64,000 nt of DNA. It comes from Octopus sinensis (Eukaryota). Shown here piece after piece: positions 8,061-64,000 of the stretch; the stretch's first letter is position 1, and every line of letters begins with the position of its first letter. The notes under the pieces were generated by a model, which worked only from the letters and a program-made list of their open reading frames with translations, was not told where the DNA came from and did no database searches. The stretch covers positions 23,445 to 87,444 of the forward strand of contig NW_021833418.1 in NCBI RefSeq assembly GCF_006345805.1, written 5' to 3'. The position numbers were made by a program, and so were the translations under genes.

Positions 8061-8892
8061 AGAAATGCCTTTCCTCGTTTGGAGTACGCACTTCTCCCTG
8101 TATCCGATTCCCGGATGCAGTCGGAGAATTCGATTCGCTGCTCAGGAATACTCTCGTTCAAATCTCAAACGTACATTTTGACGAAATGGGCTGGAAACAG
8201 GCTATCCTGCCTATCAGGCACGGGGCCGCAAAGGTCTACACCCGCTCTCCTGCCGCAAATGCCCTGGGAGGTTCCCCAGGCACGGACAGCTTAATTCCAT
8301 AATAAAGCGTCTGCTCGAGGCAACCGGCATCCCGTGCCAGCTGGAGCCCTTTGGCCTTAACAGGGGCGATGGCATGAGGCCGGACGGCGTCTCGCTCTTC
8401 CCGTTCAAGTGCGGCAAAGCGATCGTCTGGGACGCGACATGCTCTGACACTTTTGCGTCAACATGCCTTCTCGCGTCCGCGATCGAAGCTGCCACAGCGG
8501 CGAGGAGGGCAGAGACCCGGAAGAAAGACAAGTACGCCTCGCTCGCCGACAGATTCCTCTTTGTGCCTGTTTCAGTCTAAACATCAGGCACATTCGGCCC
8601 AGCCACGCTACGTTTTCTCACCGAGAGAGGCCGTCACCTCGGGAGGATTAGATACGACCCCCGCGAGGTCAATCGGCTTTTTGAGCGCGTCTCAATAGCC
8701 GTACTCAGGGGAACAGTTTCTCTATTCTCTCTGCGGCTAGCAGCTGACTTCCTGTTCCATTTTCTTTTCTATTTCGAAAAAAAAATTAAAAACCAAAAAA
8801 AGAAAAATATAAAAAAATTAAAAAGAAAAAACAAAAAAATAAAGATAAAAAAAATAAAAAAACAAAAAAAGAAAAAAAAAGGAAATTAAAAA
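8060..8892 (+). mobile_element. CRE-like RLE non-LTR retrotransposon 3' portion with A-rich tail
   Basis: WKQAILPIRHG, RPDGVSLFPFKCGKAIVWDATCSDTF, AETRKKDKY, FVPVSV, followed by ~115 nt of A-rich tail (8778-8892). Confidence 0.7.
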
Positions 8893-18774: not shown

Positions 18775-19203
18775 TACTGGGTACAAATATACTGACAAAT
18801 CAATAAATGCAGCCGCAAACATCACTTCACAGCTGCATCAAATAAACTAAATAAACCATATCGTGATATCAAGTCGATTACGCAGTCACTCCTAAATTGC
18901 AGGTTATCCACCAAACCTGGAAGAAGATCAAAAAAATAAGATTGTAGTTCCGGACAGTAACGAAAGGGTAAATTAACTGCTCAATGATTAGAACGAATAA
19001 GGAACAGAATGAAATTTCCAAACCATGTCCAATTTATATTAAAGATTCAACATAAACTTCAATGGGGAAAGATAATGAACCCAGTTTTGACTTTCTCGAA
19101 TAAAGTCACAAACTCGCATGGAAATTGGGGAGGAAATGAGAGCTTAATAAGGCTAAGAAACGGAGATAAAGTGCAGACGACGACTCGAAGTATTTCTTAA
19201 ATA
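18775..19203. repeat. 429-bp direct repeat, copy 1
   Basis: Near-identical to 22742-23171 (one T indel seen). The two copies abut the two ends of the retroelement at 19204-22741. Confidence 0.95.
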
Positions 19204-22200: not shown

Positions 22201-22741
22201 ATCCTTCGTTGCACCTTTGGAGTTGGCTTTCGAGAGTCTCTCTGAATAGACTGAACTTTCCCAATTTGGAATTTGAGTTCCTCTAGGCAATTTCTGAAAC
22301 TGGAAATTTCTACGTCCACATCATCTTGCACTCTGGAAGAGTCGCATCTCCCTTGCACATTGTTATTCCGTCTAGCCATGCTCTTTAGTTGGCATAAACT
22401 AGAGCACTTTGCCGAGTACTTCTCATTGAACTTCTCCAGGACAAGGTTCCAACCACCTCTTGGCATCCTTCCAAGTCTTTGCTTCGTGCAAGGGCAATCT
22501 GAGACACCCATTCGCCTTCAGAGACACCATTGACATTTCCGATGATCGCAGAAAGAGAATGCAAGTTAGTTTTGGCAGCATCACCAACAAGATCTTCTTT
22601 AACACCATTAGCTCTTGTGGCATTGTGAGGTCCCATAGGCGACGGTCCTGTCTTTTTTAAGTTCTTTTTATTTGCAGGAAGGCCCGTAGGTTTCGTTTTC
22701 CTTAACTGCTTGGAAACGTACATGCACACACCACAACAACT
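19204..22741 (-). mobile_element. Near full-length RLE-class (R4/Dong-like) non-LTR retrotransposon, frameshifted
   Basis: RT (LRPITCMPTLYK, WVDVKKAFDSV, GILQGDSLSPLLF, FFIDDLKI, YRYLG), CCHC knuckle (CVHCKK...DHLATRC), RHNEVVK and KPD...E RLE domain. 5' end GTTGTTGTGGTGTGTGCATG shared with the copy at 48385. Confidence 0.9.
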
Positions 22742-29824: not shown

Positions 29825-29849
29825 GACGTTCCTGACTAGTTTTGGGTTT

Positions 29850-31450
29850 TTTATTTCGTTTATTGTGTTTTGGTTGATTAAGACGTGTTGGATATGTTTT
29901 CTTAATCGATTTTGTTCATTTGGCGTCAGTGATAGAGGCCTACTCCTGCATTTGTTGTAGATTTCAGAATTCGAAATTCTGACAGAATAGTTCACACCAA
30001 ATAAGCTGTTTTCTGTAAAACGTGTCGAGATCTGTTGATTCGGCATTCGTACAGGCCAAGTGCTGGCACAGTATAACAGTATCGACTTCACAAATACATT
30101 GTACATACGTATCCGTAGATTGACACCGATTTCTTTCAGCCATCCCTTTTTGAGTTTTCTAATTGCTACTCTAGCTAGTGTTTTCATATTAATGATGTCT
30201 TGTATGTCGCGCAGTAAAGATCCAAGCTTGTTGACATGTCGCCAGCGTTCATTAAGGATATTGTCCATTCTTTTGATTTCGATGATTTCCTTTTTGGCCT
30301 TATTGACAAAAAGGAACCATTCCCCCAATTTATCTGGTGCATTCTCATCAAATCCGTGAGGGCTTCTATATCTTTGGATATAAAGTCCACGTCATTTGCA
30401 TAATCGATTTCGTGTATTTTTCCTTGATAGCATGTTCTTAGATCACGTAGTGGGGTTTCGGAATAAATCAGAAATAGCAAGGGAGAGAGGGAATCTTCCT
30501 GAGGGACGCCGATTGTGGTTTTGAAAGGTCTGGAGAGAGTTCTTCCAATCCTGGCTGAGAGTTATGTATTGGAGAGCAACAGTCGGATGATCCTTTGCAG
30601 AGATTCATTCACAAATAGTTTAAGAACCTCCATAAGCTTATGCCTGCTGATAGTATCAAATGCTCCAGACATATTAATCCCAAAAATGGTCGTTGCATTT
30701 TTAAATGTTTGGCGGTTGCACAGGACCACCTAAAACTCTACAGAATGTCTGCTGTCGACTTTCCTTCACTAAATCCACTTTAGCATGCTGACAGATATTT
30801 TTTTTGCCGAGTATTTTAACCGGTTCGAAAGGCTTTGCGTAATGTGTTTAACAAAATGACTCGACGTAAACTTTCTAGTGGTCCTTTTGGTTTGTTAGGC
30901 TTTTGTATAGATATCAATGTTCCATTTCTCAGGAATAGAACCGAGTTCGTCTTAAAACTCCGTTAAACAATCTTGCAATGATTTCAAAAAGGCACATTGG
31001 TCCACATTTCCGATCCTTCGTTCCTACGTTTCTTCAGCTTACTGCACGCATATTGGACTTTTCGAGTGTGATGACTGTTCCCAAAGTCCGTGGTTTTCCG
31101 ATAAAAGGATCGAGATCATGACTGTTCGTATCGAGTAGATTTTTCCAAGTGGGAAGCGATCAATTCGACTTGTTCTTTGGTCAAAATAAGCTTCCCGTTC
31201 TCATCCGTGACATGTATTGTTGCTTTTTCTTTCCTTGCAGTAAACGGACTCCACCAAACATTTGTGCATTGTCCTTAAATGGCTCTAGCTTGAGAAAGAA
31301 GTCATTCTATGAGTGTTCATTGTTAAGTTTGTGGATTCTTTTCCTGATTTTATTCCGTTCAGATCGAAGTTTGTTTAAAATGACCATTTTATGGTCACTC
31401 AGTAGAAGGGGCATCATTCAATAAAAGTTTGTCCTTAGACCGGCTAATGT
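29850..31450 (-). mobile_element. Decayed RTE-like non-LTR retrotransposon
   Basis: GINMSGAFDTISRHKL, GVPQEDSLSPLLFLIY, IDYANDVDF, LRIRMYNVFVKSILLY, RISNSEIY. Confidence 0.8.
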
Positions 31451-32319: not shown

Positions 32320-33972
32320 ATGTCCTGTGAATCGTTGGGAAGCTGTGGTGGATCAGTGAGTAGTGTGGAATATGAATCGACACTATTAAAATGGACGAAT
32401 TACATATACGGGTGGCAGGAGAGATACTTTATTTTGGAGAAGGGGAGTCTGAGTTACTACAAATCGTGGGAGGACGTGTGTTATGGGACTCGTGGGTGTG
32501 TGTGTGTGAAGGAGGTGCAAGTGATAGTATGGTTGGTGTGTAATGCCAGTTGGACGACTACGACGAGAGGAGGTTGGACATATGGACGAAGGACACCGTG
32601 TGGTACATTCGAGCCCCGTCGGTGGAGGAGAGGAATCGGTGGGTTGGCCTGCTGAACAGTTCGGTGGAGTCGGCCTATGGAAGTGAGGGGTCTCTCCACT
32701 CGGATGTGTTGTCCCGCGAAGGGAGGTGTCCCCTCTGCCCACACTGGAGGGACAAGTACTACAGGGAACGAGATAAGAACAGGCAACTGAGGAAACAACT
32801 GGCTGATCTATTCCACGACGCAGTGGACTACTCAGAGGACTGTCCTTACAGGGGGGACATTACTGCCCAAGTGGACTACTCAGAGGACTGTCCTTACAGG
32901 GGGGACATTACTGCCCAAGTGGACTACTCAGAGGACTGTCCTTACAGGGGGGACATTACTGCCCAAGTGGACTACTCAGAGGACTGTCCTTACAGGGGGG
33001 ACATTACTCCCCAAGTGGACTACTCAGAGGACTGTCCTTACAGGGGGGACATTACTCCCAAGTGGACTACTCAGAGGACTGTCCTTACAGGGGGACATTA
33101 CTCCCAAGTGGACTACTCAGAGGACTGTCCTTACAGGGGGGACATTACTGCCCAAGTGGACTACTCAGAGGACTGTCCTTACAGGGGGGACATTACTGCC
33201 CAAGTGGACTACTCAGAGGACTGTCCTTACAGGGGGGACATTACTGCCCAAGTGGACTACTCAGAGGACTGTCCTTACAGGGGGGACATTACTGCCCAAG
33301 TGGAGTCGTGGGAGGGGAGGTGGGCACAGGCAGGCCGAGTGCGTGTGGAGTTGTCATCCCCGCGAGAGGACATGCAGTTGTTCAGAGTGGAGAGGGACTC
33401 GTTCATGCTCACAATGACTGTCCAAGTACTCTCTCTCCCTCCTTCCTAGCACTTTACTGCCCGGGAAATTGCCATGTCCTTCTTCGACATAAAAGAACGG
33501 TGTGAGTGGCAGGACTCGGTGGAGCGGACTGAGACATTGGAGAGGTTCGGGGAGGACACGGAGGTGTTTTACGAACTGCTGCATCGAGTATTCCCCCTCT
33601 CCCAGCGGGAAATGGTGTGTTGGTCTCACATCACTCATCTCCCCTCCCACGACTCCTGGACTGTCATCAACCGTTCCTGTCACCACCCGGCCTCCCCCGT
33701 TCTTCTCTTTGTCCATTCCTAGACCATTGCCACACGCATTACTGTACACATTGACTTGTTGGCCAAGACCATCAAGACGGGGGCGAGGGAGGACATTGTC
33801 ACTGAACTGTCCTTCATCACCAGTGGTACTTTCTCCTTTTATTCCAGTCGATTTGCGTGGGTGGATTCCTCCTAATGTCGTCCACGCTGTTGCACAAAGA
33901 ATGTGGCCCAGGGGAATTGCTCGATTTGTTGCTCATTTGAGTACTCACTACAATGATCCTATTCTATATTAA
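32320..33972 (+). CDS. CERT1: Ceramide transfer protein (PH-FFAT-START) with internal repeat expansion
   Basis: PH domain LLKWTNYIYGWQERYFIL...SYYKS...GTRG...RLDI...VWYIRA, then ESAYGSEGSL (human ESGYGSESSL), FFAT-like LFHDAVD, and START domain (EWQDSVE, HRVFPLSQRE, GWIPPNVVHAVAQR, ending DPILY*). Confidence 0.9.
32823..33299 (+). repeat. 48-bp tandem repeat x10 encoding VDYSEDCPYRGDITAQ
   Basis: Eight 48-bp units plus one 47-bp and one 46-bp unit; the net -3 keeps the frame. Confidence 0.98.
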
Positions 33973-34377: not shown

Positions 34378-36076
34378 CAGTGTTTCCCAAACTTTTTAGC
34401 AATATCGCCCACCATGAAAATGTACATGGAAACAAAAAGAAAAAATAAATTTATTTATAAGAACAATCAATGAGAACAATGACGTTGTATGAAACAAGTT
34501 CTTCTGCATTTGGCTTTATGTTCGTAAGACGAAGCCGTAGATTTCATCTCTCAGCAACGTCTATCGGTTTCGACTTTTGGTCACGAGTTAAGCTAAAGCT
34601 TTTCTCAACCAAGTAAGAAGTAAGAAAAGCGATAAAAATAATTTAGCTTTCTCCCATAACACACAATATTTTTTAGGAATATCCACCTGTAGCCAAAAAT
34701 CTTGATAGGACTTTCGTTTGAATGTTGGTTTCAATTCCCAATCATTTTTGAATACAATTAGTTCCAGTCGACAACAAGATTTGACGTCGTCGATACCTTG
34801 AAAAGGATCTATGATCCAGTCCGGAACTTCTAGTTCGCACAAATCTTTGAAACGCTGCTTTATATCATTTTCAATAGTGATTAAATGTTCAGCATAATTT
34901 TCGAGATCGTCTTCAGAAAGTAGGTTATTAAGATTGTCGAGACGTGGAAATTTGCTTAACTTCTTTCTACCAATATTTCTACAAAACAAGGATAGCATTG
35001 AAATAAAAGCAGCAATGAGTTCAACCACAGTGTCGAAGAGAGAGAATATACGTCCCAAACAGTCACCCTTTGATAGCCACCTTACTTCTGTATGCATTAA
35101 AAGTCGTACAAAATCTTCATCATTATCAACACAAAGCTGGTAAAAAAGACGTGAATCCAGCGAGTTTGATTTAATTTTGTTAATAGAAGAAATAACTGTA
35201 TTAAGAGAAGAATATAATCGAACAGTTGTGTTTTTAGCAACTAAATGCTGCCGATGGATATTTTTTTAGGAATATCCACCTGTAGCCAAAAATCTTGATA
35301 GGACTTTTGTTTGAATCTCACAAATCTTTCGGTTTCTAGCATTCGTGCAAAAAGTAATTTCTGCATAATCCGACAATCTTTGACAAAACGTACATATGCA
35401 AGTAATAAAGAGTCATTTCCAGAAAGTATTGACTCATCTGACTGTAGACTAAAGTGTATATTTTTCAATATTGAACACAAATTGTTTTCTACATCGAATG
35501 CCATGTCATCGATACGTCTCTGTACCGTGTTGTTACTCATTGGAATCGACTTAATGATATTCTGATGAGGTTGGTTCATAACCGTTGTCAGTATTTCGCG
35601 AATTGATGGAACTATAAGTTGTCCGCCAATTGTGTGGGGTTTACCAGATTTAGCGACAAGTACAGCAGTATTATATGATGTAATAAGACCATCATCATTC
35701 CTTTTATGATCAGCAGTAAATATATTTGCCCATTTCTGTTGATTTTTGTGTTTTGTGAGTAGTCCTTTAAAAAACGCAAGCGGCTGGTTGGATTTATTTG
35801 GATGAACCTATATTTCCATAAAATATAAATATGAACCTTTCTTAAATGCTGACTTAATCTAGTAGGCTTCATAGCCTCGTAAGAAAACGACTTTTCGCAT
35901 ATCAAACAAAAAGGTCGTTTTTCATCATTAGGAGTTGTAGTGAAACCGTATTTTATATACATAATATTATACTGACGAGTTTTTCTACAAACAGACGAAT
36001 TTGTATCCATTAAAACACCAAAATTGATTTACTCTGTTTTAATTTATTTTTTGTTTATTCGGCCTGAATATGTATT
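34378..36076 (-). mobile_element. hAT (Charlie/Buster, ZBED5/SCAND3-like) element, one intact end
   Basis: Terminus CAGTGTTTCCCAAAC at 34378; BED finger (RPFCLIC...PTRLSQHL), PMSNNTVQRRI, FSLQSDES, HTEVRWLSKG. Flanked by a diverged 81/93-bp duplication (34297-34377, 36077-36169). Confidence 0.85.
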
Positions 36077-42124: not shown

Positions 42125-44071
42125 ATGAGCAAGCCAAGTGGGAAGATTGGACGGGTGTTCAGTGAAAAGAACAGAATGAGGAGCAGGAAAGAAAGGAAGG
42201 AGGGGGATGATGACCCGGGGATAATAGGAGTGTGCTGCAGTGTGGTGTATGAGTGGTTGAAGGAGAGGAAATGTGTATTAATCGACATTCGGAGTGGAGA
42301 GGACTACAGACAGTGCCACATCAGTTCTCCGCATGCCTTGAATGTGCCCCACACACTTGTGAATGAGAGCACTCTGAGTGACCACTCGGTGATGGCACTC
42401 CTCTCCACCCAACGGGACAGAGATGTGTTGGCACTGCGCTTCCAAGTGGAGCACGTCGTGTTGGTGGGGTATTCGGGGAGAGTGGAGAGAGACAGTCTGC
42501 TGACACTCGCCAATGCATTCGGCAGGGTTGGTCACCCCCTCTACCTCAGTACTCCTCTCGCGACACTCCACACTCCATTTCCTATTTGATTGGCGGATTC
42601 CTCGATTTTGCCCATCAGTACCCCCGACTACTCAACTCCCCTCCTATATTACCCACTGGAGTGATGTCATCCTCCGAGAACAACCTGGGGAGTATAGGTG
42701 TATTGAATGAGGACAACCCGGGGGACAGCAGTATAGGAGTGCCGAATGAGGCAGGCAAGACCATAGGAGTGAAGGCAGTGTCGAATGATGCAGGCAAGAG
42801 CATAGAAGTGGAGAATGAAGCAGGCAAGAATATACTATCGCAGAACGAGGCAGTGCACAGCAAGAGCATGGGAGTGAAGAATGTGGACAAACCAGTGCAC
42901 GGCAGCATAGGAATGAAGCCTGTGTCGAATGAGGCAGGCAAGAGCATAGAAGTGGAGAACAAGGCAGTACACAGCAGCATAGTATCGAAGAACGAGGCAG
43001 TACACAACAAGAATATAGTAGCGAAGAATGATGCAGGGAAGAGCATAGAGGTGGAGAATGAGCCGGGGCACAGCAAGAGCACAGGAGTGAAGGACAAACC
43101 GCGGGGACTGCGGAATATCGGGAATACATGTTTCATAAACTCAGTGGTGCAATGTCTGTTGAGTGTGAGGAGACTGACGTACTACTTTGGAAAGTGTAAG
43201 AAGGGAGTGTTGTGCGAACTATTCCACAGTCTGGTGGTGGAGGAGAGTGAGATGAGTGGAGTGCGGGTATGACCATCACTCAGTGCCAGGACTTTTTAGC
43301 CGAGAACTGTGTGTCCTACTCCAAGGGACAACAACACGACGCACACGAGTTCCTCAACTTTATATTGGACAGACTCCACGAGGAATTGAAGAGTAAGGGA
43401 CGGTCCCTCATCTCGGACTGCTTCCAGGTGCCCCCACTCGAGGACGACAGGGACTCCTCAAGTCCACCCTCCGTTGTCTGACGTGCTCGGGGGAGTCGGT
43501 CACCTTGGACGTGTTCATGTTCCTCGCACTCCCCATCCCCAAGTCAGACTGCACTCTCCGAGACTGTCTCGATCAGTTTTACCAGGTGGAGGAACTGAGT
43601 GGGATATACTGCGACAAGTGTGGTGGGCACGGGGATGCCACCAAGGCAGTGGCCATCTCCAGATTCCCCCCACATCTCATCATTTTCTTCTCCAGGTCCC
43701 CATCCCCCACCACTCCAGATTCCTCTACTCCAATGGACACTGTCGCAGAAACGACGTCCTCGTGTCCTACCCACCCCACTTGGATGTCTCCCCCTTCGTC
43801 CTCCACCCTCCTGTCCCCCACTACTCACTCCACGCTGTCGTCGTACTCCTCCTCTCTCATTTAGAACCACCAAGGCACTCTCGACAATGGACACTGTACC
43901 CCCCTCTCCTCACCCATAGACTCCGCACACGTCCTCTCACACTCTCACTGGTATCACTGTGACGACTCCATTGTCCGCCCTCTCACTCCTCCCCCCACCG
44001 TTCTCCTCTCCCCTCACTCCTAGTCCAACGAGGCCTACATCCTCTTTTACCAGTGCACACACAAACAATGA
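42125..44071 (+). CDS. USP8/Doa4-like deubiquitinase (rhodanese + USP domain)
   Basis: Rhodanese (VLIDIRSGEDYRQCHI...LIGGF..FAHQYP), Cys box GLRNIGNTCFINSVVQCL, QQHDAHEFL, CDKC zinc ribbon, His box NHQGTLDNGH, EAYILFYQ. No N-terminal MIT domain seen. Confidence 0.88.
42700..43090 (+). repeat. Imperfect 10-12-aa coding repeats in the USP8-like linker
   Basis: NEAGKSIEVE / NDAGKSIEVE / NEAVHSKSMGVK recur about 10 times. Confidence 0.7.
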
Positions 44072-44518: not shown

Positions 44519-45190
<672 letters not shown>

Positions 45191-48330: not shown

Positions 48331-48384
48331 ATAAGGAAACACAAACAATATTCATTATTAATCATTATAATATACACTACTAAT

Positions 48385-51300
48385 AATAGTTTGTTGTTGT
48401 GGTGTTGTGCATGTCCGTTCCTAATGATATGAGGAAATCGAATCCTAGGGGCCTTCCTGCGAAAAAGGATAAAAATAACATAACAGTGCAGGAGTGTCGT
48501 CTCTGGGGCTGGATAACAGCACAAGGACTAGTATTCATGACAATCCATTGCTGGGAATCCTACTATACCCAACTAACTTGCATTCCCTTTCGGCCATTAT
48601 CGATGATGCTATTTGTGTTTCTGAAGCTGAGTGGGTGCCTCAGATTGTTTATGCCACGAAGCAAAGAATTGGGAGGATACAAGAGGTGGATGGAACCTTA
48701 TCCGTGAGAAGTTTAATTCAAAATTCTCGAAGAGTGCAAGTCTCAGTCAACTCAAAGGAATGGTTAAACCAATGAGAGTGGATAATAATTATGGAAGCAA
48801 TTGCCATCAGAAGCAATTTCTTGAGAGCTCAGAAATTTCCACTTTTAGAAAGTGTCTAGAAGAGTTGAATATACAAATTAAGAATATTGAATCGATTCCA
48901 AGGGATTCACGTAAACCAACTCCAAAAATTCAAAATAAATATTTGAAAACTGATATATTGACAGGATTGAATTCGGCGATATATTATATTACGAAAGATA
49001 ATCATCCTAATGATATCAATAGCATTTCTGATATTCTATATGCTGCTCAATGTGCGTATTTATCTCTAACCATGAGAGACAAAGCACAGAGCACATGGGT
49101 AGAAAATATTGAAAAGAAAATTTCAAAATTATCTGCAGAATTGGAAATTGTTAAGTCCCATTCCAATCAAACACTACCTCCATCTGAAAAGCAAAAGCAA
49201 AAGTAATGGATGTCTCTGTCGCTATGGGTATAAGAAAACTAAGAAAGGTGAGCTGTCGAGGATTCAGATATTATTGCAAGACCTGATTAGGATTAACAAT
49301 AAGAAAATAGAAGTTCATAATTCAAGGAAGCAATTTCGTAAGGATAATCAGTGCTTTGAATTAAATCGAAAAAGATTCTATCGAGATTTAACAAAGAAAG
49401 AGGAAGTGACGCTGTATGGATTTGATGATGAAGAATGTGTCTCTTTTTGGCAAAAAAGTCTGGAGCGAGAGAAATGGAGGCCTCAATCTTATGACGTTGT
49501 TGGAAAACGAACTACTTGTGCTGAACATATGCTTCCAGAGTTTACGGAAGAGTTTTTTGGAAATGTTATTAAGTATCTTCCTGACTGGAAGGCATGTGGA
49601 TGTGATGGGATATATAACTTTTTCATTAAGAAGATGGAGTCATTACATGGATTTCTGTGTCACGAGATAACCCGAATAATTAATGGAGAGTACATGCCTG
49701 AAAGTTGGTTTTACACTGGAATAACATATTTGATTCCTAAAAAAGATGATTGTGAGACCCCGAAGGACTTACGTCCTATAACGTGTATGCCGACATTGTA
49801 TAAACTTGTCACCAAATGTGTTAATGTAAAACTGGCTGATTTTGTCGAGGCATTTGGCCTAATTTCAGACAACCAACTTGGAACGAGGAAGTATTGTCAA
49901 GGCGCCAAGGAGCAAGCTCTCATTAACCAATGTTTGAACAAGGAGTACGGGAATGGCCTTTATTCTGCTTGGGTCGATGTGAAGAAAGCATATGACTCAG
50001 TTGATCATGATTTTTTGTTTCACGTTTTGGATTGTTCTGGAATCCCGCTTTGGATCGTAAACTTTGTGAAGAGCGTAGTTAAGAAGTGGGCAGTAAGCTG
50101 CATATGGAAGGTAGAAGAATTGGATCAGTGAAGTTAAACCGAGGAATTTTACAGGGAGACTCATTGTCTCCTTTACTATTTGTTATGGTATTAGATCCTC
50201 TAAGCAGGATCCTTAATTCCGTGTTTCCAAAACTTGAAATTAACCAGGAAGATCCCAATATGTTAACATATTCTACTAATCATTTCCTATTTATTGACGA
50301 TCTAAAAATATTTGCTCTCAAACAAGACACTTTACTCAAAATGATGGAAGCTGTTAACGGATTTTTTAAAATTGATTGGTTTGAAACCGTATTTTATATA
50401 CATAATGACAGTTTATAAGGTAAAGAAATCTAATTAAGAGGCGGAACCGCAGCCGAGAGGAGGATCGAGGAACAGTTCCCCCTTAGAACTGCGAGAAGAG
50501 ATGCGCTCAAAAAGCCACATCAGTTCACGGGGGTCGTTCCTCGCCCTTCCCAATGACCTTCCGATCTTCGAGAGGAAACGGGAGAGTAGACGGGCAAAGA
50601 CACCGGAAGTTTCACTGACACCGGTCGAAGATGAAACGGTCCATCAGGGAGGGTACTTAGATGCCTTCTTCGTCTCCGCCCTCTTGGCTGCTGAGCCAGC
50701 CTCGACCGCCGACAAGGAAAGACTTGAAGATGGTGGAAGCAATGTTCTTAGAATAGAGTTATGGACTCTATCTTTGAGAATGTTAGAAGAGGATAACTAT
50801 GCTATCGAAAACAAAACTCAACTCTGTGAATCTGTTTCGTGCTATAAATGAATATGCATTGTCACAATATAATTATTATATTGGGCTAATCAATATTGAA
50901 CCTTCTGAATTTGATGATATTGACAGACAAATACGGCAATTGCTTACGTCGCTCAGATTACATCTCAAACCTGCAAATAAAGAGAGACTGTATTTTAAAC
51001 CGGAAGGCTCTTGGAAGAGGGCTTTCATCAGTTGCTTTCAAAAGTGAACTAATGCTCTTTCAGTTCCTTACGAGTCTGGAAAATATGTCAACTATATGCT
51101 TACGGAGGGCGGGGATTCTGCGTGTAATTAAAATGAATAAATGGCATTTGGCTATGATCGCAGGATTTCTATCCTCCAAATATGCAATTATTGATAAGAA
51201 GAGTATTACTATGGAGTCTCTAAAGTCCAGTCAGATACAATATTTACAAAAGAAAATTAGTTCTAAAGCACTACATTCTGTGCTTTTCAAATGTGTGATG

Positions 51301-52255
51301 ATGAACCTAATGTTGATTTACCTGCATCCTCAGAATGGCTATCTAATGGAAATAATGGGCCACGAAGTGAAGCATTGTATTGTCTTCTGCAAGATCGAAA
51401 CTTGTTCTTTTACATCCGCTGACTCATTATGCAATCATTGTAAGAAAAGCAAGAAAACTGTTGACCACATGGCTACTCAGTGTGGTAAAATGCTCAACAG
51501 TGATTATCTCCGGAGACACAACGAAGTTGTGAAGTGTATTCACCTTAACTTGTGCCGAATGTATGGACTCAAAAAAGCAAGACGATTGAAGGGACATTCT
51601 GCAGTCAACACTGTCGACGGGAAAAGTTGAAATCAGGGTTGATTGTACAATTCTCACCGAAACAAAAGTAGAATATAACAAGCCAGATATCTTTGTCCAC
51701 GACAAAGTCAGAAACGAAATAAATCTAATTGAAGTGGGTATTACTTCACAGGATCGCCTCAAGCAAGTGGAGGTTGAAAAGTGTCACAAGTATGACCTAT
51801 TGGCAAGTGAGCTTTCGCTTCTGTATAGCTGTCAAGTAAAAATAATTCCTGTGGTTATGACATGGGATGGAGTTGTCTCGAAATGCTTCAAAATTATATG
51901 AAGAAAAACTATCTATTGAAGCAGGAACGAGGACATACATCCAATCCGTTGTACTGAAAAGAACGCTCGAGAGTATGATGATCGAACACAAGCACGGAAT
52001 GAAGGTATCTGGTGAAGAATACGCTTCTGCTTCCAACCGGTATGTGGAGATGGCATGCAAAAATGAAGACGACCCAATGAATGCTAAAGAAGATGCAATG
52101 GTGAATCAGATGTGGTAGTGGGGAGTAAGAGGCAGCTGGAAGTAGACTCTTCTTCCAAGAGAAGGAGAGTGGATATCAGCGAGCTGGAGTGAGATCTGCT
52201 TAGTTTCTGATTAACTATTAATTATTATTGGTTTAAAAACGGATATAGTTTTTTT
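48385..52255 (+). mobile_element. Full-length RLE-class (R4/Dong-like) non-LTR retrotransposon, disrupted
   Basis: Same motifs as 19204-22741 (LRPITCMPTLYK, GILQGDSLSP, FIDDLK, CNHCKK..DHMATQC, RHNEVVK, KPD). 12-bp flanking duplication TACACTACTAAT at 48373-48384 and 52256-52267. Confidence 0.9.
50440..50755 (-). mobile_element. CRE-like 3' fragment inserted into the RLE element
   Basis: AVEAGSAAKRAETKKASKY...ETSGVF...AVLRGNCSSIL on the opposite strand, splitting the RT region. Confidence 0.65.
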
Positions 52256-52350: not shown

Positions 52351-55300
52351 CAGTATGGTCCAAAAATAGACACCTTGTTTTTTTGTCGAAAAAGTCTTAT
52401 ATCTGCTAAAATAATACATTTATTAATATTTTTGGTGAAATATCTGTTTTAGAGTTTAATGAATTCATTTATAGAAAATCGAAATGAATTTAATTATACC
52501 AATATACAGTGAATCCTCGCAAATTGGCCACCTCGCAAATTGCCAATTTTTAAATTGGCCAATTTTTTCACAATTTACTAAGAAAAAAATTAATTTTCTT
52601 AGTAAATTGGCCAATTCTCAAATTGGCCACAATTTTTGAATTATTATTTTTTTTAATTAGAAAATAAACTATTTTTTAATCACATGTCTTATAAAATTTC
52701 TCGTGGACGTTATACTCGGCTCACTTTTCTTGAAAAAACACAAATTATAAACTACAAGGAAGAAAATGACAGTGTTTCGTGTCAGCTTCTGGCTGACAGA
52801 TTCTCACATTTATTCCACAAGACGATCTCGAGAAAGACGATCAATAATCTACTGCTTAATAAAGACTCTATTTTACGGGATTCGAAAATCTATCAAAATT
52901 CGTATAAAGCTGCTCACAAACCAAAATTTCCTACGCTTGAAGAAAAATTGATCGAATGGATGGATACAATAGAGTCTAAAGGTATTAATTGAAAACCAAT
53001 TTTTAGGTGGTTTTTTGAATGATTCCTTAATATCGTAAGGCTGCGCATTTTGCCGAAGAGCTACAACTTAGTAACTTTAAAAATTCTAATGGATTTCTGG
53101 CAAAATCAAAAAGAGACACGGTTTTAGAATGCTAAAATTACATGGAGAGATGCGAACAGATAAAGTAGTTGACATTAATTCTTTTCGTGAAGAATTTAAA
53201 GAAATTTCTAAATCGTATAAGCCTGATCTAATTTATAATTTGGATGAAACTGCATTATACTACAAGCTTATTCCATCGAAAAGCGTATGCAGAAACAGAT
53301 TCCAAGGATACAAAAATTTAAAGACCGTGTGTCTATTATGCTTTGTTCAACATGACCGGAAGTCATAAATTGAAACCTGTGATGATTGGAAAACCAAAAA
53401 TGCCTAGATGTTTTAAAAATTTTGACTATGGATGTCTTGTCTCATATTATAGCTCACAGAAAGCTTGGATGACTGGATCTATTTTTATTGATTGGATTAT
53501 TAGCTTTGATCTCCAGCTTAAAATTAAAAAGAAGAAAATTTTATTGCTAATAGACCACTGTCCTGCACATTCTATTCCTCAAAACTTGGATTGTATTAAG
53601 ATTTTATTTTTTCCTAAAAATTCTACTGGATTACTACAACCAATGGATATTGGAATTATAAAAACCTTCAAGACTCATTTCATGAGAAGAAAGCTACAGT
53701 ACTTAACTGATTTGCTGGAGACTGAAAATATTTCTGTATACAATTCATACAAAAAATTGACATTAAAAGATGCAATTTTGTTTGTTAATATGGCTTGGGA
53801 TGACGTATCTACTGAAACTATTCAAAATTGTTTTAAGATTTTAAATGAATCTAATCACGAAAATACATTAATTGAACATTATGAGACTGAAATTGAAAGA
53901 ACTGACATTTTCGATCCTCTAATGAGCGAAGATTTTCTAAATATCGAAAACACAGAAGATCAAGATATAAACGAAAATTGTTTACAAGAGGATCAAGAGT
54001 CTGAAATTAGCGACGAAGAGACAAAAATCATATATCCACTCGATAGAAAAGATATTGCAAAGACATTAACTAGAATAGAAAGGCAACTTTACTGTAATGC
54101 AGAAAATGAGAATGATGTTTCGCTGATTACTGCAATAAGAAAATACAAAGAAAATGTAAAAAGAGCAAAATAAAAAGGAATTAGGGATTGAATTTTATTT
54201 TAATAAAATTTAAACGTGTTTATTTTATTTTTAAATATTGATTTTTTTCAAATTGGCCATTTTCTCAAATTGGCCATAAAATCTCTATGTACCCAAAAAT
54301 GGCCAATTTGCGAGGATTCACTGTATTTTAAAAAATTAATGAATTTTTAATGGTCCATAAATAGTACACCCTTCAAAATTCAACATCTGTTGTGCTTAAA
54401 ATTACCTAATAAAGTTTTATTTATATACAAAAATATTTTTATTTTAGTTTATTGTTTTTTTATTTTTTTAAAGTAATTATTTAACTAAATAATTATCTTA
54501 TTGTCAAAATAATTAACATGAACTTTCGTAATGTTGATCTCTCTTCAGATATTTAAAATCGTATTATTTCCATACACGAGGACAACTATGGATACAAAAA
54601 AATTGCCAAAAAACTTGAGATTAGCAAGAACACCGTTGCTAGATTGTACAAAAAATACCGAAAAAACGGAATAAACGGCATTTTAAATCGAGAAAGAGGG
54701 AGACCGAAGAAGTTATCTATCAGATCTATCCGTCTAATCAGACGTTCTGCTGAAAAAATCCAAGAATCTCTTCATCTGCAATTGCAAAACAATTGGAATC
54801 TTATTCTGTTATTAAAATATAAAAAACTACAATAAAAAGGAGACTACATGAATGCAATTTATATGGCTGATACTTCGAAGGAAACCGTTATTGTCAAAAA
54901 GGTACAAAAGAAACCGTTACAATTTGCAAAAAAATATGTAGGCAAAAATATGGATTTTTGGAATAGAATTCTGTGGTCAAATGAGACCAAAATCAATTTG
55001 TTCAGATCAAATGGAATTAAGCATATGTGGCGCAAAAATGGCGGTGCACTAAATCCAAAATGCATAGTATCTACAATGAAACATGGCGGCGGAAATATAA
55101 AGATATGTGGATTTATGAGCTTCCAAGGACCTGGTGAACTTTATACCATAAATGGAATCATGAATGCAGACATGTACATTAATATACTTGAGAAAAAAAT
55201 GATGCCCTTTATCAACGATCATTCAGAAAATCCGAATTTCCAACAAGATACGATCCGAAGCATACTGCAAAGAAGACTAAAAGTTTTTTGACAGAAAAAA

Positions 55301-59404: not shown

Positions 59405-59845
59405 TCCACCTCCCGATAAAATTACTTATAAAGTTAAAATAATTAGTTGCAGTATTTTGTTACGTCAACCTAGGCGTCTTAGGGCCACCGTTTAGTGCAC
59501 GGAGGGCAGGTCAGTCTACAACAGGCATCGGGATGTTTCTGTCAACTCGGATTTCCACAAATTCGTTGGTGGTAACAGATTGGACTAATATTAAAAGCCG
59601 ATATTTCAACCAATTCACTGTCTTTTTAATAAAAAATATTTACAACTAAAATAAATAAAATATATTCGAGGCAAAAAGAAAATCTCTTGTTTCTTGAAAG
59701 AGAATTATCTCCAATTTTTCTTTGATCTTGTTTCTCAAAACCATACTGAAATTTCAGACTTTGGCGTCTTTGAAGTTGTAGTCATAACATTACATAGTGA
59801 TTAAAGTGATATTTATGAATATTTTAGCGTGCTAAGTTAATAACA

Positions 59846-60060
59846 ATGTTTTGAGTGGTGGCTTAAAATTTTATAATTTTGTTTTAGAATCCAAAAAGTT
59901 TCACAACAGTGGTAGCCATACCTTTATGTGGGAGGGGTTGTTCTCGGTTCAGATACTAGAGTGACCTATCTTCCAAATACTCCCGACGAATACTGTAATG
60001 AATTGTTGTATTGACAAATCAGATGATGACAATTTGATCAAAATCTCCCAGATAACTAAT
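59846..60060 (+). pseudogene. Pseudogene of the divergent proteasome beta-type gene (5' part)
   Basis: MF*V|NPKSF-TTVVAIP(+1 frameshift)YVGGVVLGSDTRVTYLPNTPDEY|YDDNLIKISQIT with the same two introns as 61323-64000; truncated by a Tc1 insertion at TA 60060-60061. Confidence 0.7.
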
Positions 60061-60061
60061 A

Positions 60062-61010
60062 CACCCCTCGACATTAAAATCCGAACACTTAATTTTTAGC
60101 AAATTTTTAATCATTTTTAATAAAAGAATTTATTTGAGCTTCTTTATTTGTATTATTTTAACTATTTATATATTTAAATATATATTCGAACATATAATTT
60201 TCAAAATTAAAGCAGAAACGTGTTTTCTAGTGACAAAAAATTCCGAACGGTATTTTGTTCAACTCGCAGAATACAATTTTTATTAGACAGAAATGAATAA
60301 TTTCAAAAAAGGACAAATTATATCTTTATATAATCAAAATTTCTCCTATAAAATGATTTCGGACATCGTAAATATACCGAAGACAACTGTTTGGGAGTTT
60401 GTTAAAAAATATCTAAAAACCGGGATTACGTGCAGAAAGGCTGGATCTGGAAGGCCACCCAAGTTCAGTCAAGATGAAATTAGGATTCTTTTATCATTAT
60501 CAACTGATAATTTTTGAACCGCAGCTACCTTGTCTTCAGAAATGGAAAAAATTACACAAAAAAAAGTCTGAGCACGCACAATAACAAGAATTCTAAACTC
60601 AAAAGGTTTGTATGGACGAGTTGTAAAGAAACGACCATTTCTAAGTTCAAAAAATATTGCTCTCAGATATGGAATATCTAAAAAATTTCTTGCAATTTCC
60701 GACAGCGGATGGAGGAAAGTTATTTTCTCCGACGAATGTAGTTTTGAACTTTTTTCCCATTCAAGACGAATGTATCAATACAGAAAAAAAGGGAATAAGT
60801 TGAGATATGCGAAGATAATACCTAGTTTTAAGTTTGGTGGAGGGAAAGTTCTTGTTTGGGGCTGTTTTTCGTATTTCGGAATGGGGAAATTAGTTTTTAT
60901 TGATGGAAAAATGAACTCTGGGGAATATATTAATATTCTGGCAAATAATCTTGAAGATTCATCGAATAAAATGGGATTGAGCGACTATATATTCCAACAA
61001 GATAATTATT
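60062..61010 (+). mobile_element. Tc1 transposon, 3'-truncated
   Basis: TA|CACCCCTCGACATTAAAATCCGAACAC end; HTH (IPKTTVW, GSGRPPK), WRKVIFSDEC, KFGGGKVLVWGCFS, IFQQDN. Confidence 0.8.
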
Positions 61011-61322
61011 AAGATGATGGAACTGAAAAATTTATAAAATCGGATTAAAAAGTTGTTTTAATCCAATAGTACAAAACTGAATTATTGTATTTTGAACTAT
61101 AGTGATCTAAAACAGATGTTTAGCCTAAATTCCAGTCTTTTTGACGAATTTAATTTAAAAAATCCACCTAACTTCATTTTGCGAGAATAAATTTTTCTTT
61201 GATCTTATTTCTTAAAACCATACTACAATTTCATACTCTACCGTCTTTGATGTTGTAGTTATAATTCTACGTCGCGATTAAAGTGATATTTATGAATATA
61301 CCAACGTGTTAGATAGATAAAA

Positions 61323-64000
61323 ATGTTTCGAATGGTAGCTTTGAATTTTCTAATTTCGTCTTAGAATCATATAAGTATGACAACTGTGGTGACCATACCC
61401 TATCTTGGAAGGGTTGTTCTTGCTGCAGATAGCAGAGTAACCCAAGATGCGAATACTCCCAACAAAAGCTGTAATAAATTGTCGGACTAACAAATTAGAT
61501 AATGACAGGTCAAACAAAATATTTCAAATTACGAACAACTCAACTATTGGGTTCACGGGGAACATGCACGTTTATGAGAAATTGTTGGGTGCATGTCGTC
61601 TTAATTATTTGTATTTTTCTGATTAATTTGTGTCACAGGCTGGATAATGCCCTGGGTTGGATAATACCCCCTTAAAATTTTTTTTAAAATCAAACGAAAA
61701 TAACCTGATAATTAATTAAAAATAACTTGATAATGGAATTAAGTCGATTTATTCAATTTTTTATCAATTTTTTGATTGAAAGAATTTTTCAAAGAGTCGG
61801 CATCACCAATTTTTCCGAATTATTTATTTATTTATTAACTCCAAGATCACCGAGAAAGATAGGTCAGAACTAACTAATTAGGTGATCCCTGCCTCCAACC
61901 ACAGCCGTACTTTCCTTACATGATCTTCTGATGACCCGACCGTAATCCGGAAAAGCCTTTTTCCGAATCAATAACGTATTTTATTATAATTATACAATTT
62001 TTTGGGTCTACCATTTAAAAACAAATATTAAAAATTCATGAATTTTTATTATATAAAAATTTTTTATAAGAGTCATATTTTTTTATACGACTTTTGTGTA
62101 CATATTTGGATGATTCGTCATTAAGATCTTTAAGTACGCACTTCTCTTTATCAACCTCCGATATTTCATATATAGTGGAATCAATCTGATCGTATATGGG
62201 GTATTTTCGGTTATTTGAATTCGCATCAATATCATGTCTCAGTAGGACATTATCTCCTACGGCTACATCTTCATCAAATTTCCATTTCCGCCTCCTTTTC
62301 ATTTTTTCTCCAGAATTTCTTGATAGAAGTCTTTATAGCTTCCAAAAGACCCATTTGAGGCACTAGTTGAGCTAATCCACCTTTTGATCGATTGATTGAA
62401 TCTAAAGATAAATTTACAAATAACTTGTCTTTCTACTACCCTGAATCCATGGTGCTTTAGGGCGTCCACTTATGTGTATGATTTTCAGATCATTACACAT
62501 TGTTTCCATACATTTGTTCTTAAATTCTTTCCCATTATCCGTCTGTAGAATAAATAAGGGACCATTTCCTTTCTCAATATCGAAACCAACTTATCTCTTC
62601 CAAAATGTGTCCTCATATGTTCAATCTATAATAATTATGTAACGATCACCTCGATAGTTTTTAGTTTAAGTTCCTTTTCTTCTTTGGGAAAAAAGCGTAA
62701 CCTCTGGTTTTTGTATTTTATGTATACTATCCCTTCCTCCTCGAAAGTTAACTGTTCTGCTAATTTTCTGTGTCTTTTCTTTTCCGATTTCTGAAATCGG
62801 TCAATATAAAAAACATCTATTTGAATATTTTTGATTACTTCAAGTTCATCTTTGGTAAAGTTGAGTAAAACCATTTCTGGAATATAGATTTGATCAAATA
62901 TACTTATTATTTTTTCACCGGGTCATACAAACCCCATGTGCATGCAAAGCGGAAACAAGGAGCGAAAATCCTAAAAGGACTGAGGCGTTTTTGTCTAAGC
63001 GCAGAAACGTTTCTACACATCTACCAGACTTGTGTTCAGCCACTAATAATCTATGGCTCGGAGGGCTGGTACCAAATGATGAAAGGGACCTTCTAATCGC
63101 CAAACTCGAAAAAACCAGACGATTTGCCATCAAACTGGCATTCGGCCTGGAGCTCAGCAGTCCGCTGGAAGACCTGCATGAGCGGAGTTTGACACGATTG
63201 ACGCGATCCTGGCAAAAACTCGAACTCGCTGAGGGAGATAAGACAGTCTCCTGGGGCAAAACCGAAGTTGAGACTTTCGTGGCTCTCGTTATCAGCCCCC
63301 TAAGCTCTAATTCCTCGGCCACTTTTCTTTTGGACCTATTGTAATAAATAAACCATATTCATTCATTCATTATTTTTTCAAATTTGAAAACTTGGATAAC
63401 CAAAACAAATTTTCACGCTAGATTAATTTGAAAAAAAACTTTAATAAATTACTAAAATAATTAAGAAAATCAAAAAATCTAATCATAATTAATTTGAAAA
63501 ATATTTATTTTTTTAAAATAACGTTGAGGGGGCATTATCCAACCCAGGGCATTATCCAGCCGGTGACAATTTGTTATTTAGATTCGACCATAATGTGGAT
63601 CCAGGAAATTTGGTAATGTTCATTCATGGAATTTTGGCAAATTATACACTTCCAATTCTATTGTCGGTATATTTTATTTTTTTATATTTTTAGGCCGTGA
63701 TTCTTGTATGTGTTTTCACAGGTGGAATCTATACAATTAAAATTGATTCCTTTATTCCTTTTATGGGATCTGGACAAAACTCGGCATTTCAGTGGGTATT
63801 CGCACAGTATTTTTGTATAATTATTGGCAGTCACCTCGGAGTATTGATAACGCAAAGTGAGGCGATTAAAATAGCCCACGATGCTATAAAACATGCAGCG
63901 CAAAAGGACCGATTCACAGAAGGATTTTCCCAAAGTATATTTTAATGAATAATATCTTAGTTCACACAATATCTTTATTTGGAATTAGTTTAGTGGGGAC
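61323..64000 (+). CDS. Divergent proteasome beta-type (Ntn-hydrolase) subunit, runs off the window end
   Basis: Exons 61323-61334, 61365-61470, 61499-61610, 63582-63666, 63694 onward (probable further 24- and 26-nt introns): MFRMNHISM-TTVVTIPYLGRVVLAADSRVT...YNDRSNKIFQITNNSTIGFTG...PFMGSGQNSA...TQSEAIKIAHDAIKHAAQKDRFTEG. No stops or frameshifts in the model. Confidence 0.8.
61631..63568 (-). mobile_element. Ginger/TDD-like integrase DNA transposon inside a micro-intron
   Basis: TGT...ACA termini, ~45-bp TIRs (TGTCAC.GGCTGGATAATGCCCTGGGTTGGATAAT.CCCCCT), 5-bp TSD ATTTG; decayed integrase with ILQTDNGKEFKN. Confidence 0.9.
62900..63372 (+). mobile_element. L2-like LINE 3' end nested in the Ginger element
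   Basis: HIYQTCVQPLIIYGSEGWY...IAKLEKTRRFAIKL, ending aataaataaaccatattcattcattcatt. Confidence 0.7.

What the first reader, a model, noticed from the sequence alone, without database searches (positions are those of the whole stretch)
61323..64000. Divergent, apparently catalytic proteasome beta paralog lacking the canonical Gly(-1)
Seen: hand-splicing five or more AT-rich exons gives an uninterrupted Ntn-hydrolase with Thr1 (TTVV), Asp17-Ser-Arg19 at exact canonical spacing, a Lys33 equivalent (4-aa insertion), GFTG, a GSG motif and KD.FT.G (Asp166/Ser169 equivalents). Residue 45 aligns to Phe. Thr1 is preceded by a 9-aa leader ending in Met (Phe in the pseudogene copy), not Gly. Established: beta1/2/5 use Thr1/Asp17/Lys33 and autoprocess after Gly; residue 45 shapes S1 specificity; extra beta paralogs build specialised proteasomes (vertebrate immuno/thymoproteasome, Drosophila testis subunits); HslV starts directly at Met-Thr. 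Inference: an independently evolved specialised proteasome subunit with hydrophobic S1 preference, possibly made by initiation at the Met before Thr1. It is far more divergent and AT-rich than the ordinary PSMB2 in the same window.
Basis: partly seen in the sequence, partly recalled or inferred. Interest (0 to 1): 0.8.

Follow-up and report, generated by a model that had tools for sequence, protein, structure and literature searches.

The report
Divergent proteasome beta gene, transposon-interrupted
At the end of the window sits a real but extremely divergent extra copy of a catalytic-type proteasome beta-subunit gene, most likely from a dicyemid parasite of octopus; it keeps the active-site residues but lacks the usual glycine before Thr1, and a 1.9 kb transposon in one of its 28-base introns probably disables this copy.

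Summary
Splicing seven exons (61323-64000+, introns of 24-30 nt, all GTA..AG) gives an open proteasome-family protein: Pfam PF00227 at 33.9 bits, and full-length coverage of the archaeal beta model. By alignment it has Thr1, Asp17-Ser-Arg19, a Lys33 equivalent after a 4-aa insertion, Phe45, Gly47, GSG and Asp166. Ser169 is Thr. Met, not Gly, precedes Thr1.

It is far more divergent than the PSMB2 in the same window (19.6 against 135.7 bits versus PDB chains) and more AT-rich (GC3 0.35 against 0.58).

- Intron 2 was 28 nt and now holds a 1,938-bp element with terminal inverted repeats and a 5-bp target-site duplication. The element's end supplies a CAG acceptor exactly 28 nt from the donor, which predicts an 88-aa truncated product.
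- The residue aligned to Gly170, a beta-ring contact, is Glu.
- The upstream "pseudogene" is a partial 5' tandem duplicate, cut off at a Tc1-like element.

The host is probably a dicyemid, judged from 22-30-nt introns and LINE copies 98% identical to contigs in an Octopus sinensis assembly.

Verdict: a lineage-specific, fast-evolving catalytic-type beta paralog, kept open by selection until recently, whose current function is doubtful. The "specialised active proteasome" reading is untested. No orthologue, expression data or structure could be obtained.

The parts
61190..61322 (+). Upstream region shared with the partial duplicate (80% identical). It includes a 23-nt block (61277-61299) that is identical in both copies and may be a core promoter (inference).
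61323..61334 (+). Leader exon (ATG TTT CGA ATG = MFRM), followed by a 30-nt intron at 61335-61364.
   Evidence: The same ATG and a 30-nt GT..AG intron are kept in copy A, where the third codon is TGA.
61365..61470 (+). Exon 2: NHISM then TTVVTIPYLGRVVLAADSRVTQDANTPNKS. Met(-1) is at 61377-61379, Thr1 at 61380-61382 and Asp17 at 61428-61430.
61471..61498 (+). Intron 1, 28 nt (GTAATA...TTAG).
   Evidence: An intron of the same length is present in copy A.
61499..61610 (+). Exon 3: (Y)NDRSNKIFQITNNSTIGFTGNMHVYEKLLGACRLNY. The Lys33 equivalent is at 61516-61518, Phe45 at 61552-61554 and Gly47 at 61558-61560.
61611..63581 (+). Intron 2, now 1,971 nt. Removing the insert and one target-site copy leaves GTATTTTTCTGATTAATTTGTTATTTAG, which is 28 nt.
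61631..63568 (.). Inserted element of 1,938 bp. It has 59-nt terminal inverted repeats (88% complementary) and an ATTTG target-site duplication (61626-61630 and 63569-63573). Its interior holds a degenerate integrase-like fragment on the minus strand and a non-LTR reverse-transcriptase tail fragment. Its left end (..GTCACAG, ending at 61638) creates an AG acceptor 28 nt from the intron-2 donor.
63582..63666 (+). Exon 4: (L)FDHNVDPGNLVMFIHGILANYTLPILLS, followed by a 27-nt intron at 63667-63693.
63694..63806 (+). Exon 5: AVILVCVFTGGIYTIKIDSFIPFMGSGQNSAFQWVFA. GSG is at 63766-63774 and the Ser129 equivalent at 63769-63771. A 24-nt intron follows at 63807-63830; the frame stays open whether or not it is removed.
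   Evidence: Searches compared with 19, and 32.
63831..63934 (+). Exon 6: HHLGVLITQSEAIKIAHDAIKHAAQKDRFTEGFSQ. Asp166 is at 63907-63909, Thr at the Ser169 position at 63916-63918, and Glu at the Gly170 position at 63919-63921. A 26-nt intron follows at 63935-63960.
63961..64000 (+). Start of exon 7 (IHTISLFGISLVG...). The gene continues beyond the window, with roughly the last 20-40 residues missing.
59713..60100 (+). Partial 5' tandem duplicate (copy A), a pseudogene. It covers the upstream region, leader, exon 2, intron 1 and the start of exon 3. It has TGA in the leader (59852-59854), Phe at -1, a 1-bp insertion after TTVVAIPL, and exon 3 degenerates after ..KISQITN.
60100..61055 (+). Truncated Tc1/mariner-like element lying between the two copies.
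   Evidence: HTH_Tnp_Tc3_2, E 2.6e-9; inverted repeat I5.

Best explanation
This is a lineage-specific, fast-evolving duplicate of a catalytic-type 20S proteasome beta-subunit gene. The genome has ultra-short introns and is most likely that of a dicyemid parasite of octopus.

The gene sits in a transposon-rich, AT-rich stretch next to a dead partial duplicate of its own 5' end. It was kept as an open, correctly spliceable gene with an intact Thr1/Asp17/Lys33/Gly47/Ser129/Asp166 set for most of its history, which implies that it once made a working threonine protease.

In this assembly, a 1.94-kb TIR element has landed in its 28-nt second intron. The element provides a CAG acceptor at exactly the native 28-nt distance. 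The most likely transcript therefore splices into the element and stops after 88 residues, so this copy is probably disabled or poorly expressed.

If a full-length product is made, it would have to expose Thr1 without the canonical Gly(-1). That could happen by initiation at Met(-1) followed by methionine aminopeptidase, or by atypical autolysis of a 6-9-aa leader.

Shown: gene model, family membership, residue alignment, insertion anatomy, relative divergence.

Inferred: past function, splicing outcome, host organism, maturation route.
For: - Family and residues.
- Open frame across seven exons, with P of about 3e-6 by chance.
- Its introns match the host's class (22-30 nt, GTA..AG): with PMC6543705 and PMC13644364.
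- Extreme divergence relative to a housekeeping subunit of the same genome: 19.6 against 135.7 bits, no BLASTP similarity to that PSMB2 and no tblastn hit from human beta5. A sequence this divergent with no stop or frameshift argues for long evolution under selection, not as a pseudogene.
- Insertion: TIRs, target-site duplication, a 28-nt empty site, and a decoy acceptor giving an 88-aa product.
- Every other intron resolved in the window is 22-30 nt, apart from one of 81 nt. The D. japonicum mean is 38 bp (PMC6736024).
- Signs of relaxation and turnover: a partial dead duplicate, GC3 of 0.35 against 0.58-0.71 in conserved genes, and Glu at the Gly170 position (PMC5899138).
- Host inference: LINE copies 98-99% identical to contigs of the Octopus sinensis assembly GCA_006345805.1. 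O. sinensis is the host from which D. japonicum was collected (PMC6736024).
Against: - There are no expression data. Longer introns do exist in these genomes, so the 1,971-nt intron might still be spliced correctly.
- The insertion could be an allele or an assembly-specific state.
- The A-versus-B comparison is too short to show selection: 47 codons, dN/dS 0.41, exons 72% identical against flanks 80%.
- Paralog status is inferred only from divergence. I could not survey the genome for canonical beta1/2/5 genes.
- No orthologue was found. This is weak evidence, because the ordinary PSMB2 also found nothing in the word-indexed search.
- The 3' end of the gene lies outside the window.
Confidence: 0.5

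Rival explanations
1. This is a currently functional, specialised catalytic beta subunit that enters a variant 20S particle. The transposon-bearing intron is removed correctly, and Thr1 is exposed by Met removal or unusual autolysis.
For: The open frame, splice sites and catalytic residues are all intact. The exons flanking the insertion are undamaged. Extra beta paralogs are known in other animals (established knowledge). T01-family expansion is reported in another reduced parasite, with 22 homologues against 14 in Sphaerospora (PMC7296530).
Against: The decoy acceptor lies at the native 28-nt distance. Gly(-1) is absent, and a free Thr1 risks N-acetylation (PMC4792962). Glu stands at the Gly170 interface position (PMC5899138). 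GC3 resembles that of transposons. No expression or orthologue evidence exists.
Confidence: 0.25
2. It is the sole, very fast-evolving orthologue of a standard catalytic subunit in a reduced, fast-evolving parasite genome. It would most likely be beta1, given the best PDB matches.
For: The best PDB hits are kinetoplastid beta1 chains at 19.6, 19.0 and 15.2 bits. Dicyemids have only about 5,000 genes and high evolutionary rates (PMC6736024, PMC6543705).
Against: The normally less conserved PSMB2 (beta4) of the same genome scores 135.7 bits. An essential catalytic subunit should not be seven-fold weaker, AT-rich, transposon-interrupted and without Gly(-1). The margins between subtypes are only a few bits.
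Confidence: 0.1
3. It is a free-standing Ntn-hydrolase that does not assemble into a 20S particle. It would work in an HslV-, Anbu- or connectase-like way, starting directly at Met-Thr.
For: It has a Met-Thr start. The propeptide glycine and Gly170, an inter-ring contact, are both lost. No subtype can be assigned.
Against: HslV models match only residues 1-53, at 15-16 bits against cut-offs of 137-158. The archaeal 20S beta model matches end to end.
Confidence: 0.08
4. It is a chance or hand-splicing artefact and not a gene.
For: The exons are short and AT-rich, and the model was built by hand.
Against: The Pfam E-value is 3e-8 with full-length coverage. Six introns are all GTA..AG and 24-30 nt, like the host's genes. 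Intron lengths are conserved in the duplicate.
Confidence: 0.02

Closest known systems
Catalytic 20S proteasome beta subunits (beta1/PSMB6, beta2/PSMB7, beta5/PSMB5; MEROPS T1, Pfam PF00227)
   Same: It matches the family profile over its full length. It has Thr1, Asp17, Arg19, the Lys33 equivalent, Gly47, the Ser129 GSG motif and Asp166. Its length is typical of a mature beta subunit.
   Different: It has no Gly(-1); the residue is Met here and Phe in the duplicate. The leader is at most 9 aa. There is a 4-aa insertion before Lys33. Residue 45 is Phe, the Ala49-Ala50-Asp51 positions read Met-His-Val, Ser169 is Thr and Gly170 is Glu. It scores only about 20 bits against any solved beta chain, so the subtype cannot be assigned.
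Lineage-specific extra beta paralogs (vertebrate immuno- and thymoproteasome subunits, Drosophila testis-specific subunits)
   Same: It appears to be an additional catalytic-type copy alongside ordinary subunits, in a tandem-duplicating locus.
   Different: The known paralogs keep Gly(-1) and propeptides and remain clearly assignable to beta1, beta2 or beta5. This one does none of these, and its expression is unknown.
HslV (ClpQ)
   Same: The open frame can begin Met-Thr-Thr, so Thr1 could be exposed simply by removing Met.
   Different: HslV profiles match only the N-terminal ~50 residues, far below their cut-offs. The gene has spliceosomal introns and 20S-type motifs (AADSR).
PSMB2 (beta4) of the same window, 2269-2916 minus strand
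   Same: It belongs to the same Pfam family and genome and has the same ultra-short intron style.
   Different: PSMB2 is non-catalytic, well conserved (135.7 bits to vertebrate PSMB2) and GC-richer. The two proteins show no significant pairwise similarity.

Membership tests
Proteasome subunit family (Pfam PF00227 / MEROPS T1) | Profile match above the curated threshold over the whole domain | tested here: met
   PF00227 at 33.9 bits against a cut-off of 22.4, positions 5-186 of 189. TIGR03634 aligns over positions 1-180 of 185, although its 34.9 bits fall far below that equivalog's own cut-off of 224.
Catalytically active 20S beta subunit | N-terminal nucleophile Thr1 together with Asp17 and Lys33 | tested here: met
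   In the alignment to Leishmania beta1 (6td5_H), Thr1, Asp17 and Arg19 sit at identical positions. Lys33 aligns after a 4-aa insertion.
Catalytically active 20S beta subunit | Gly47, Ser129, Asp166 and Ser169, which position Thr1 | tested here: inconclusive
   Gly47 and Asp166 align. The GSG motif is present, but HMMER places it 2 residues off. Position 169 is Thr, not Ser.
Catalytically active 20S beta subunit | Gly(-1) preceding Thr1, needed for autocatalytic propeptide removal | tested here: not met
   The residue is Met in this copy and Phe in the duplicate. The role of Gly(-1) is described in PMC4792962.
Catalytically active 20S beta subunit | Gly170 at the beta-ring/beta-ring interface | tested here: not met
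   Glu aligns to Gly170. G170A and G170W are lethal in yeast beta2 (PMC5899138).
Catalytically active 20S beta subunit | Ntn-hydrolase alpha-beta-beta-alpha fold | not tested
The fold is inferred only from full-length profile coverage.
Catalytically active 20S beta subunit | Incorporation into a 20S particle and peptidase activity | not testable with these tools
   This needs proteomics and biochemistry.
Specific subtype beta1, beta2 or beta5 | A clearly best match to one subtype | tested here: inconclusive
   Kinetoplastid beta1 scores 19.6, 19.0 and 15.2 bits; yeast beta2 about 14.4; microsporidian beta5 14.1.
HslV | Match to HslV equivalog models | tested here: not met
   Scores of 15.7 and 14.9 bits against cut-offs of 137 and 157.75, covering residues 1-53 only.
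Expressed, intact gene (not a pseudogene) | Uninterrupted gene structure and evidence of a transcript or orthologue | tested here: inconclusive
   The frame and splice sites are intact, but intron 2 carries a 1,938-bp insert with a decoy acceptor. No related protein was found. The 3' end lies outside the window.

The most novel reading that the evidence does not exclude
A metazoan (dicyemid) has evolved an extra catalytic 20S-type beta subunit that matures without the otherwise invariant Gly(-1) autolysis step. It would do so by translating from the Met directly before Thr1, HslV-style, or by cleaving a Met-Thr bond. The resulting specialised proteasome would have an altered, Phe45-lined S1 pocket, and the transposon-bearing intron would still be spliced out.
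Probability: 0.12. Interest if true: 0.7.

Novelty: new member of a known kind. Interest (0 to 1): 0.35.

Why it matters
If this gene makes a working subunit, it would be a natural exception to the rule that eukaryotic active beta subunits need a propeptide ending in Gly(-1). It would also be an example of proteasome diversification in one of the most reduced animal genomes.

As things stand, the locus is more useful as an illustration of two other things:
- Gene birth and decay in a transposon-rich dicyemid locus.
- How a transposon can sabotage a 28-nt intron by donating an acceptor at the native distance.

The host inference also matters in practice. It flags probable parasite-derived contigs, and "Octopus sinensis" protein records, in a public cephalopod assembly.

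Tried and rejected
- Word-indexed homologue search with the spliced protein gave no hit. The same search with the window's ordinary PSMB2 also gave none. The negative result is therefore uninformative about orthologues.
Run on the longest contiguous exon (63694-63933), it returned a single hit. That hit, P0001, is a 962-aa protein built of 56-aa tandem repeats whose score sums 13 weak matches. I rejected it as an artefact.
- Exact look-ups of window ORFs in public assemblies found nothing. I could not reach the missing 3' end of the gene.
- Rfam and tRNA scans of the window found nothing.
- I considered HslV and rejected it.
- I considered a recent duplicate of the neighbouring PSMB2 and rejected it.
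- A myxozoan origin fits the intron lengths (PMC13644364). I set it aside in favour of a dicyemid origin because the window's transposons are 98-99% identical to contigs in an octopus assembly.
- The dN/dS between the two copies (0.41 over 47 codons) is too small a sample to use.
- The bacterial promoter scan is irrelevant to a eukaryote.
- I searched the dicyemid and myxozoan literature for proteasome paralogs. Nothing specific turned up.
Full report
**What is there**

The region 61323-64000 (+) can be spliced into a single open reading frame from seven exons. The exons are 61323-61334, 61365-61470, 61499-61610, 63582-63666, 63694-63806, 63831-63934 and 63961-64000. The last exon runs off the window.

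The introns are 30, 28, 1,971, 27, 24 and 26 nt. All begin GTA and end AG. The 24-nt intron is optional for the frame, but removing it improves the best PDB match from E 0.096 to 0.0065.

For this base composition, 182 stop-free codons would arise by chance with P of about 3e-6.

**Family**

- Pfam assigns the product to PF00227 Proteasome: E 3.1e-8, 33.9 bits against a cut-off of 22.4, profile positions 5-186 of 189.
- NCBIfam's archaeal beta model aligns end to end, over 1-180 of 185 positions at 34.9 bits.
- HslV models match only residues 1-53, at about 15 bits.
- The best solved relatives are kinetoplastid beta1 chains (19.6, 19.0 and 15.2 bits). Yeast beta2 (about 14.4) and a microsporidian beta5 (14.1) follow.
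- The gene is therefore of catalytic type, but its subtype cannot be assigned.

**Residues**

Positions come from the alignment to Leishmania beta1.

| Canonical residue | In this gene | Window coordinates |
|---|---|---|
| Thr1 | Thr | 61380-61382 |
| Asp17 (with Ser18, Arg19 at exact spacing) | Asp | 61428-61430 |
| Lys33 | Lys, after a 4-aa insertion | 61516-61518 |
| Residue 45 | Phe | 61552-61554 |
| Gly47 | Gly | 61558-61560 |
| Ser129 (GSG motif) | Ser; HMMER places the motif 2 residues off | 63769-63771 |
| Asp166 | Asp | 63907-63909 |
| Ser169 | Thr | 63916-63918 |
| Gly170 | Glu | 63919-63921 |

Thr1 is preceded by Met. With the upstream ATG and the 30-nt intron, the leader is MFRMNHISM.

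**How unusual it is within its own genome**

- The window's PSMB2 (beta4) gene at 2269-2916 (-) scores 135.7 bits against vertebrate PSMB2. The candidate scores 19.6.
- The two proteins show no significant pairwise similarity.
- Human beta5 finds nothing in the window by tblastn.
- GC3 is 0.35 for the candidate, 0.58 for PSMB2 and 0.71 for an ARF gene. Surrounding non-coding and transposon DNA has 0.26-0.34 overall GC.
- The candidate's introns belong to the host's own class. ARF has introns of 25, 25 and 22 nt. PSMB2 has 24, 81, 27 and 24 nt.
- It is therefore a resident spliceosomal gene, not a contaminant or a recent transfer.

Intron 2 contains a 1,938-bp element at 61631-63568.

- It has 59-nt terminal inverted repeats, 88% complementary. 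The 28-nt core occurs only at these two places in the window.
- It is flanked by an ATTTG target-site duplication.
- Removing the element and one duplication copy restores GTATTTTTCTGATTAATTTGTTATTTAG, a 28-nt intron like its neighbours.
- The interior carries a degenerate integrase-like fragment (Pfam rve, E 0.0047, below threshold). By eye it also carries a frameshifted non-LTR reverse-transcriptase tail.
- No other copy exists in the sequence available to me.

The element's left end reads ..GTCACAG. That places an AG exactly 28 nt from the intron-2 donor. Use of this acceptor gives MFRMNHISM-TTVV...CRLNYLLDNALGWIIPP-stop, 88 residues without the C-terminal half of the fold.

Dicyemid-type introns are tightly clustered below 30 nt, with a median of 27 bp and two thirds under 30 bp (PMC6543705). 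The mean is 38 bp (PMC6736024). I therefore infer that the decoy acceptor or intron retention is more likely than accurate removal of 1,971 nt. This is inference, not observation.

**The duplicate**

The segment 59713-~60100 is a partial tandem copy of the upstream region, leader, exon 2, intron 1 and the start of exon 3. It is 73-80% identical at the nucleotide level. It is dead for four reasons:

- It has TGA in the leader.
- It has a 1-bp insertion after TTVVAIPL.
- Its exon 3 is degenerate.
- It ends at a truncated Tc1/mariner-like element, 60100-61055 (HTH_Tnp_Tc3_2, E 2.6e-9).

It keeps both intron lengths (30 and 28 nt) and has Phe at -1. The ancestor therefore probably used the upstream start and also lacked Gly(-1).

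Exons are no better conserved between the copies (72%) than the flanks are (80%). dN/dS is 0.41 over only 47 codons. This is inconclusive.

**Host**

Introns of 22-30 nt with a bare GTA..AG signal occur among animals only in myxobolid myxozoans and Dicyema (PMC13644364).

A LINE reverse-transcriptase ORF from the window matches proteins labelled "uncharacterized protein [Octopus sinensis]" at 86-98% identity. The window shares 3.5-kb and 2-kb LINE segments at 98-99% nucleotide identity with three contigs of GCA_006345805.1.

D. japonicum was collected from O. sinensis. Its genome has 36.7% GC, 49% repeats and abundant LINE ORF2 (PMC6736024), and the window fits that description. I conclude that the window is dicyemid DNA. 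It may come from dicyemid-derived contigs inside the octopus assembly.

**Mechanism**

A sequence this far diverged with no stop, no frameshift, six intact splice-site pairs and the whole catalytic set has almost certainly evolved under selection as a working threonine protease. It has not evolved as a long-dead pseudogene.

How it would mature is the open point.

- Gly(-1) positioning is described as decisive for autolysis, and acetylated Thr1 cannot be rescued (PMC4792962). A Met-Thr junction is therefore a poor autolysis substrate.
- A propeptide-free Met-Thr start would be exposed to N-acetylation.
- Gly170 lies at the ring-ring interface, and any change there is lethal in yeast beta2 (PMC5899138). 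Here it is Glu.

These features, the transposon-like codon composition and the insertion lower the odds that this copy is an active 20S subunit today.

**Limits**

- Tools that would predict structure or search exhaustively accept only contiguous window sequence. No fold model exists, and only an 80-residue exon could be searched.
- That search returned one repeat-protein artefact.
- No orthologue, transcript or genome-wide PSMB census was obtainable.
- The 3' end of the gene is outside the window.

**Verdict**

This is a real gene and a new, very divergent member of the proteasome beta family, with an unusual N-terminus. It is probably a decaying or recently disabled lineage-specific paralog (confidence 0.5). 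The specialised-active-subunit reading remains possible (0.25) and is cheaply testable with existing dicyemid RNA-seq and assemblies.

Noticed in passing
window 19200-22741 and 48383-52231; L001, L002, L003 (GCA_006345805.1 contigs VCDQ01010661.1, VCDQ01010235.1, VCDQ01005537.1): LINE copies in this ultra-short-intron window are 98-99% identical to contigs of the Octopus sinensis assembly. The encoded proteins are catalogued as 'uncharacterized protein LOC... [Octopus sinensis]'. The octopus assembly and its protein set probably contain dicyemid parasite sequence; horizontal transposon transfer is a less likely alternative.
   Followed up: partly
window 2269-2990 (-): This is an ordinary PSMB2 (beta4) orthologue with introns of 24, 81, 27 and 24 nt. 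The junction between its first exon (MSGCILGFCTDNFTVVAADTKV) and the next (ASPLLTTTP...) cannot be made in frame with any GT..AG intron. The cause may be an assembly indel or a non-canonical splice.
   Followed up: partly
window 44522-45124 (-): An ARF1-like GTPase gene, 177 aa when spliced, with three introns of 25, 25 and 22 nt that are GC-rich like their exons. It is a clean example of the host's intron class.
   Followed up: yes
window 27364-28451 (+): An HSP70-superfamily gene, by eye HSP110-like, in GC-rich exons. A LINE fragment lies just downstream at 29591-30328 (-).
   Followed up: partly
window 32550-33449 (+): An open frame containing about ten tandem copies of a 16-aa unit (VDYSEDCPYRGDITAQ) inside what looks like a conserved gene.
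   Followed up: no
window 42125-43272 (+): This looks like the 5' part of a ubiquitin-specific protease gene. A possible rhodanese-like first exon is followed by a long repetitive NEAGKSIEVEN-type stretch and then a GLRNIGNTCFINSVVQCL Cys-box. This was recognised by eye only.
   Followed up: no
window 61631-63568: An unclassified 1,938-bp element with 59-nt TIRs beginning TGTCAC(A/C)GGCTGGATAATGCCCTGGGTTGGATAAT and a 5-bp ATTTG target-site duplication. Its interior is made of retroelement fragments. No second copy exists in the window or the fetched loci.
   Followed up: partly
window 53343-54173 (+), 10925-11404 (+), 34588-35097 (-), 4922-5485 (+), 7835-8302 (+): Further transposon ORFs, recognised by eye: pogo/Tigger-like DDE, hAT-like C-terminal domains, a mariner-like DDE, and an integrase-tail ORF related to the one inside the intron-2 insert. 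A large share of the window appears to be mobile-element sequence.
   Followed up: no
P0001 (public protein, 962 aa): This protein consists entirely of about 17 tandem 56-aa repeats (MNSIFIGC..GIYVL..). It was the only hit of the exhaustive search, and its score is the sum of 13 weak matches. It is not a homologue.
   Followed up: yes
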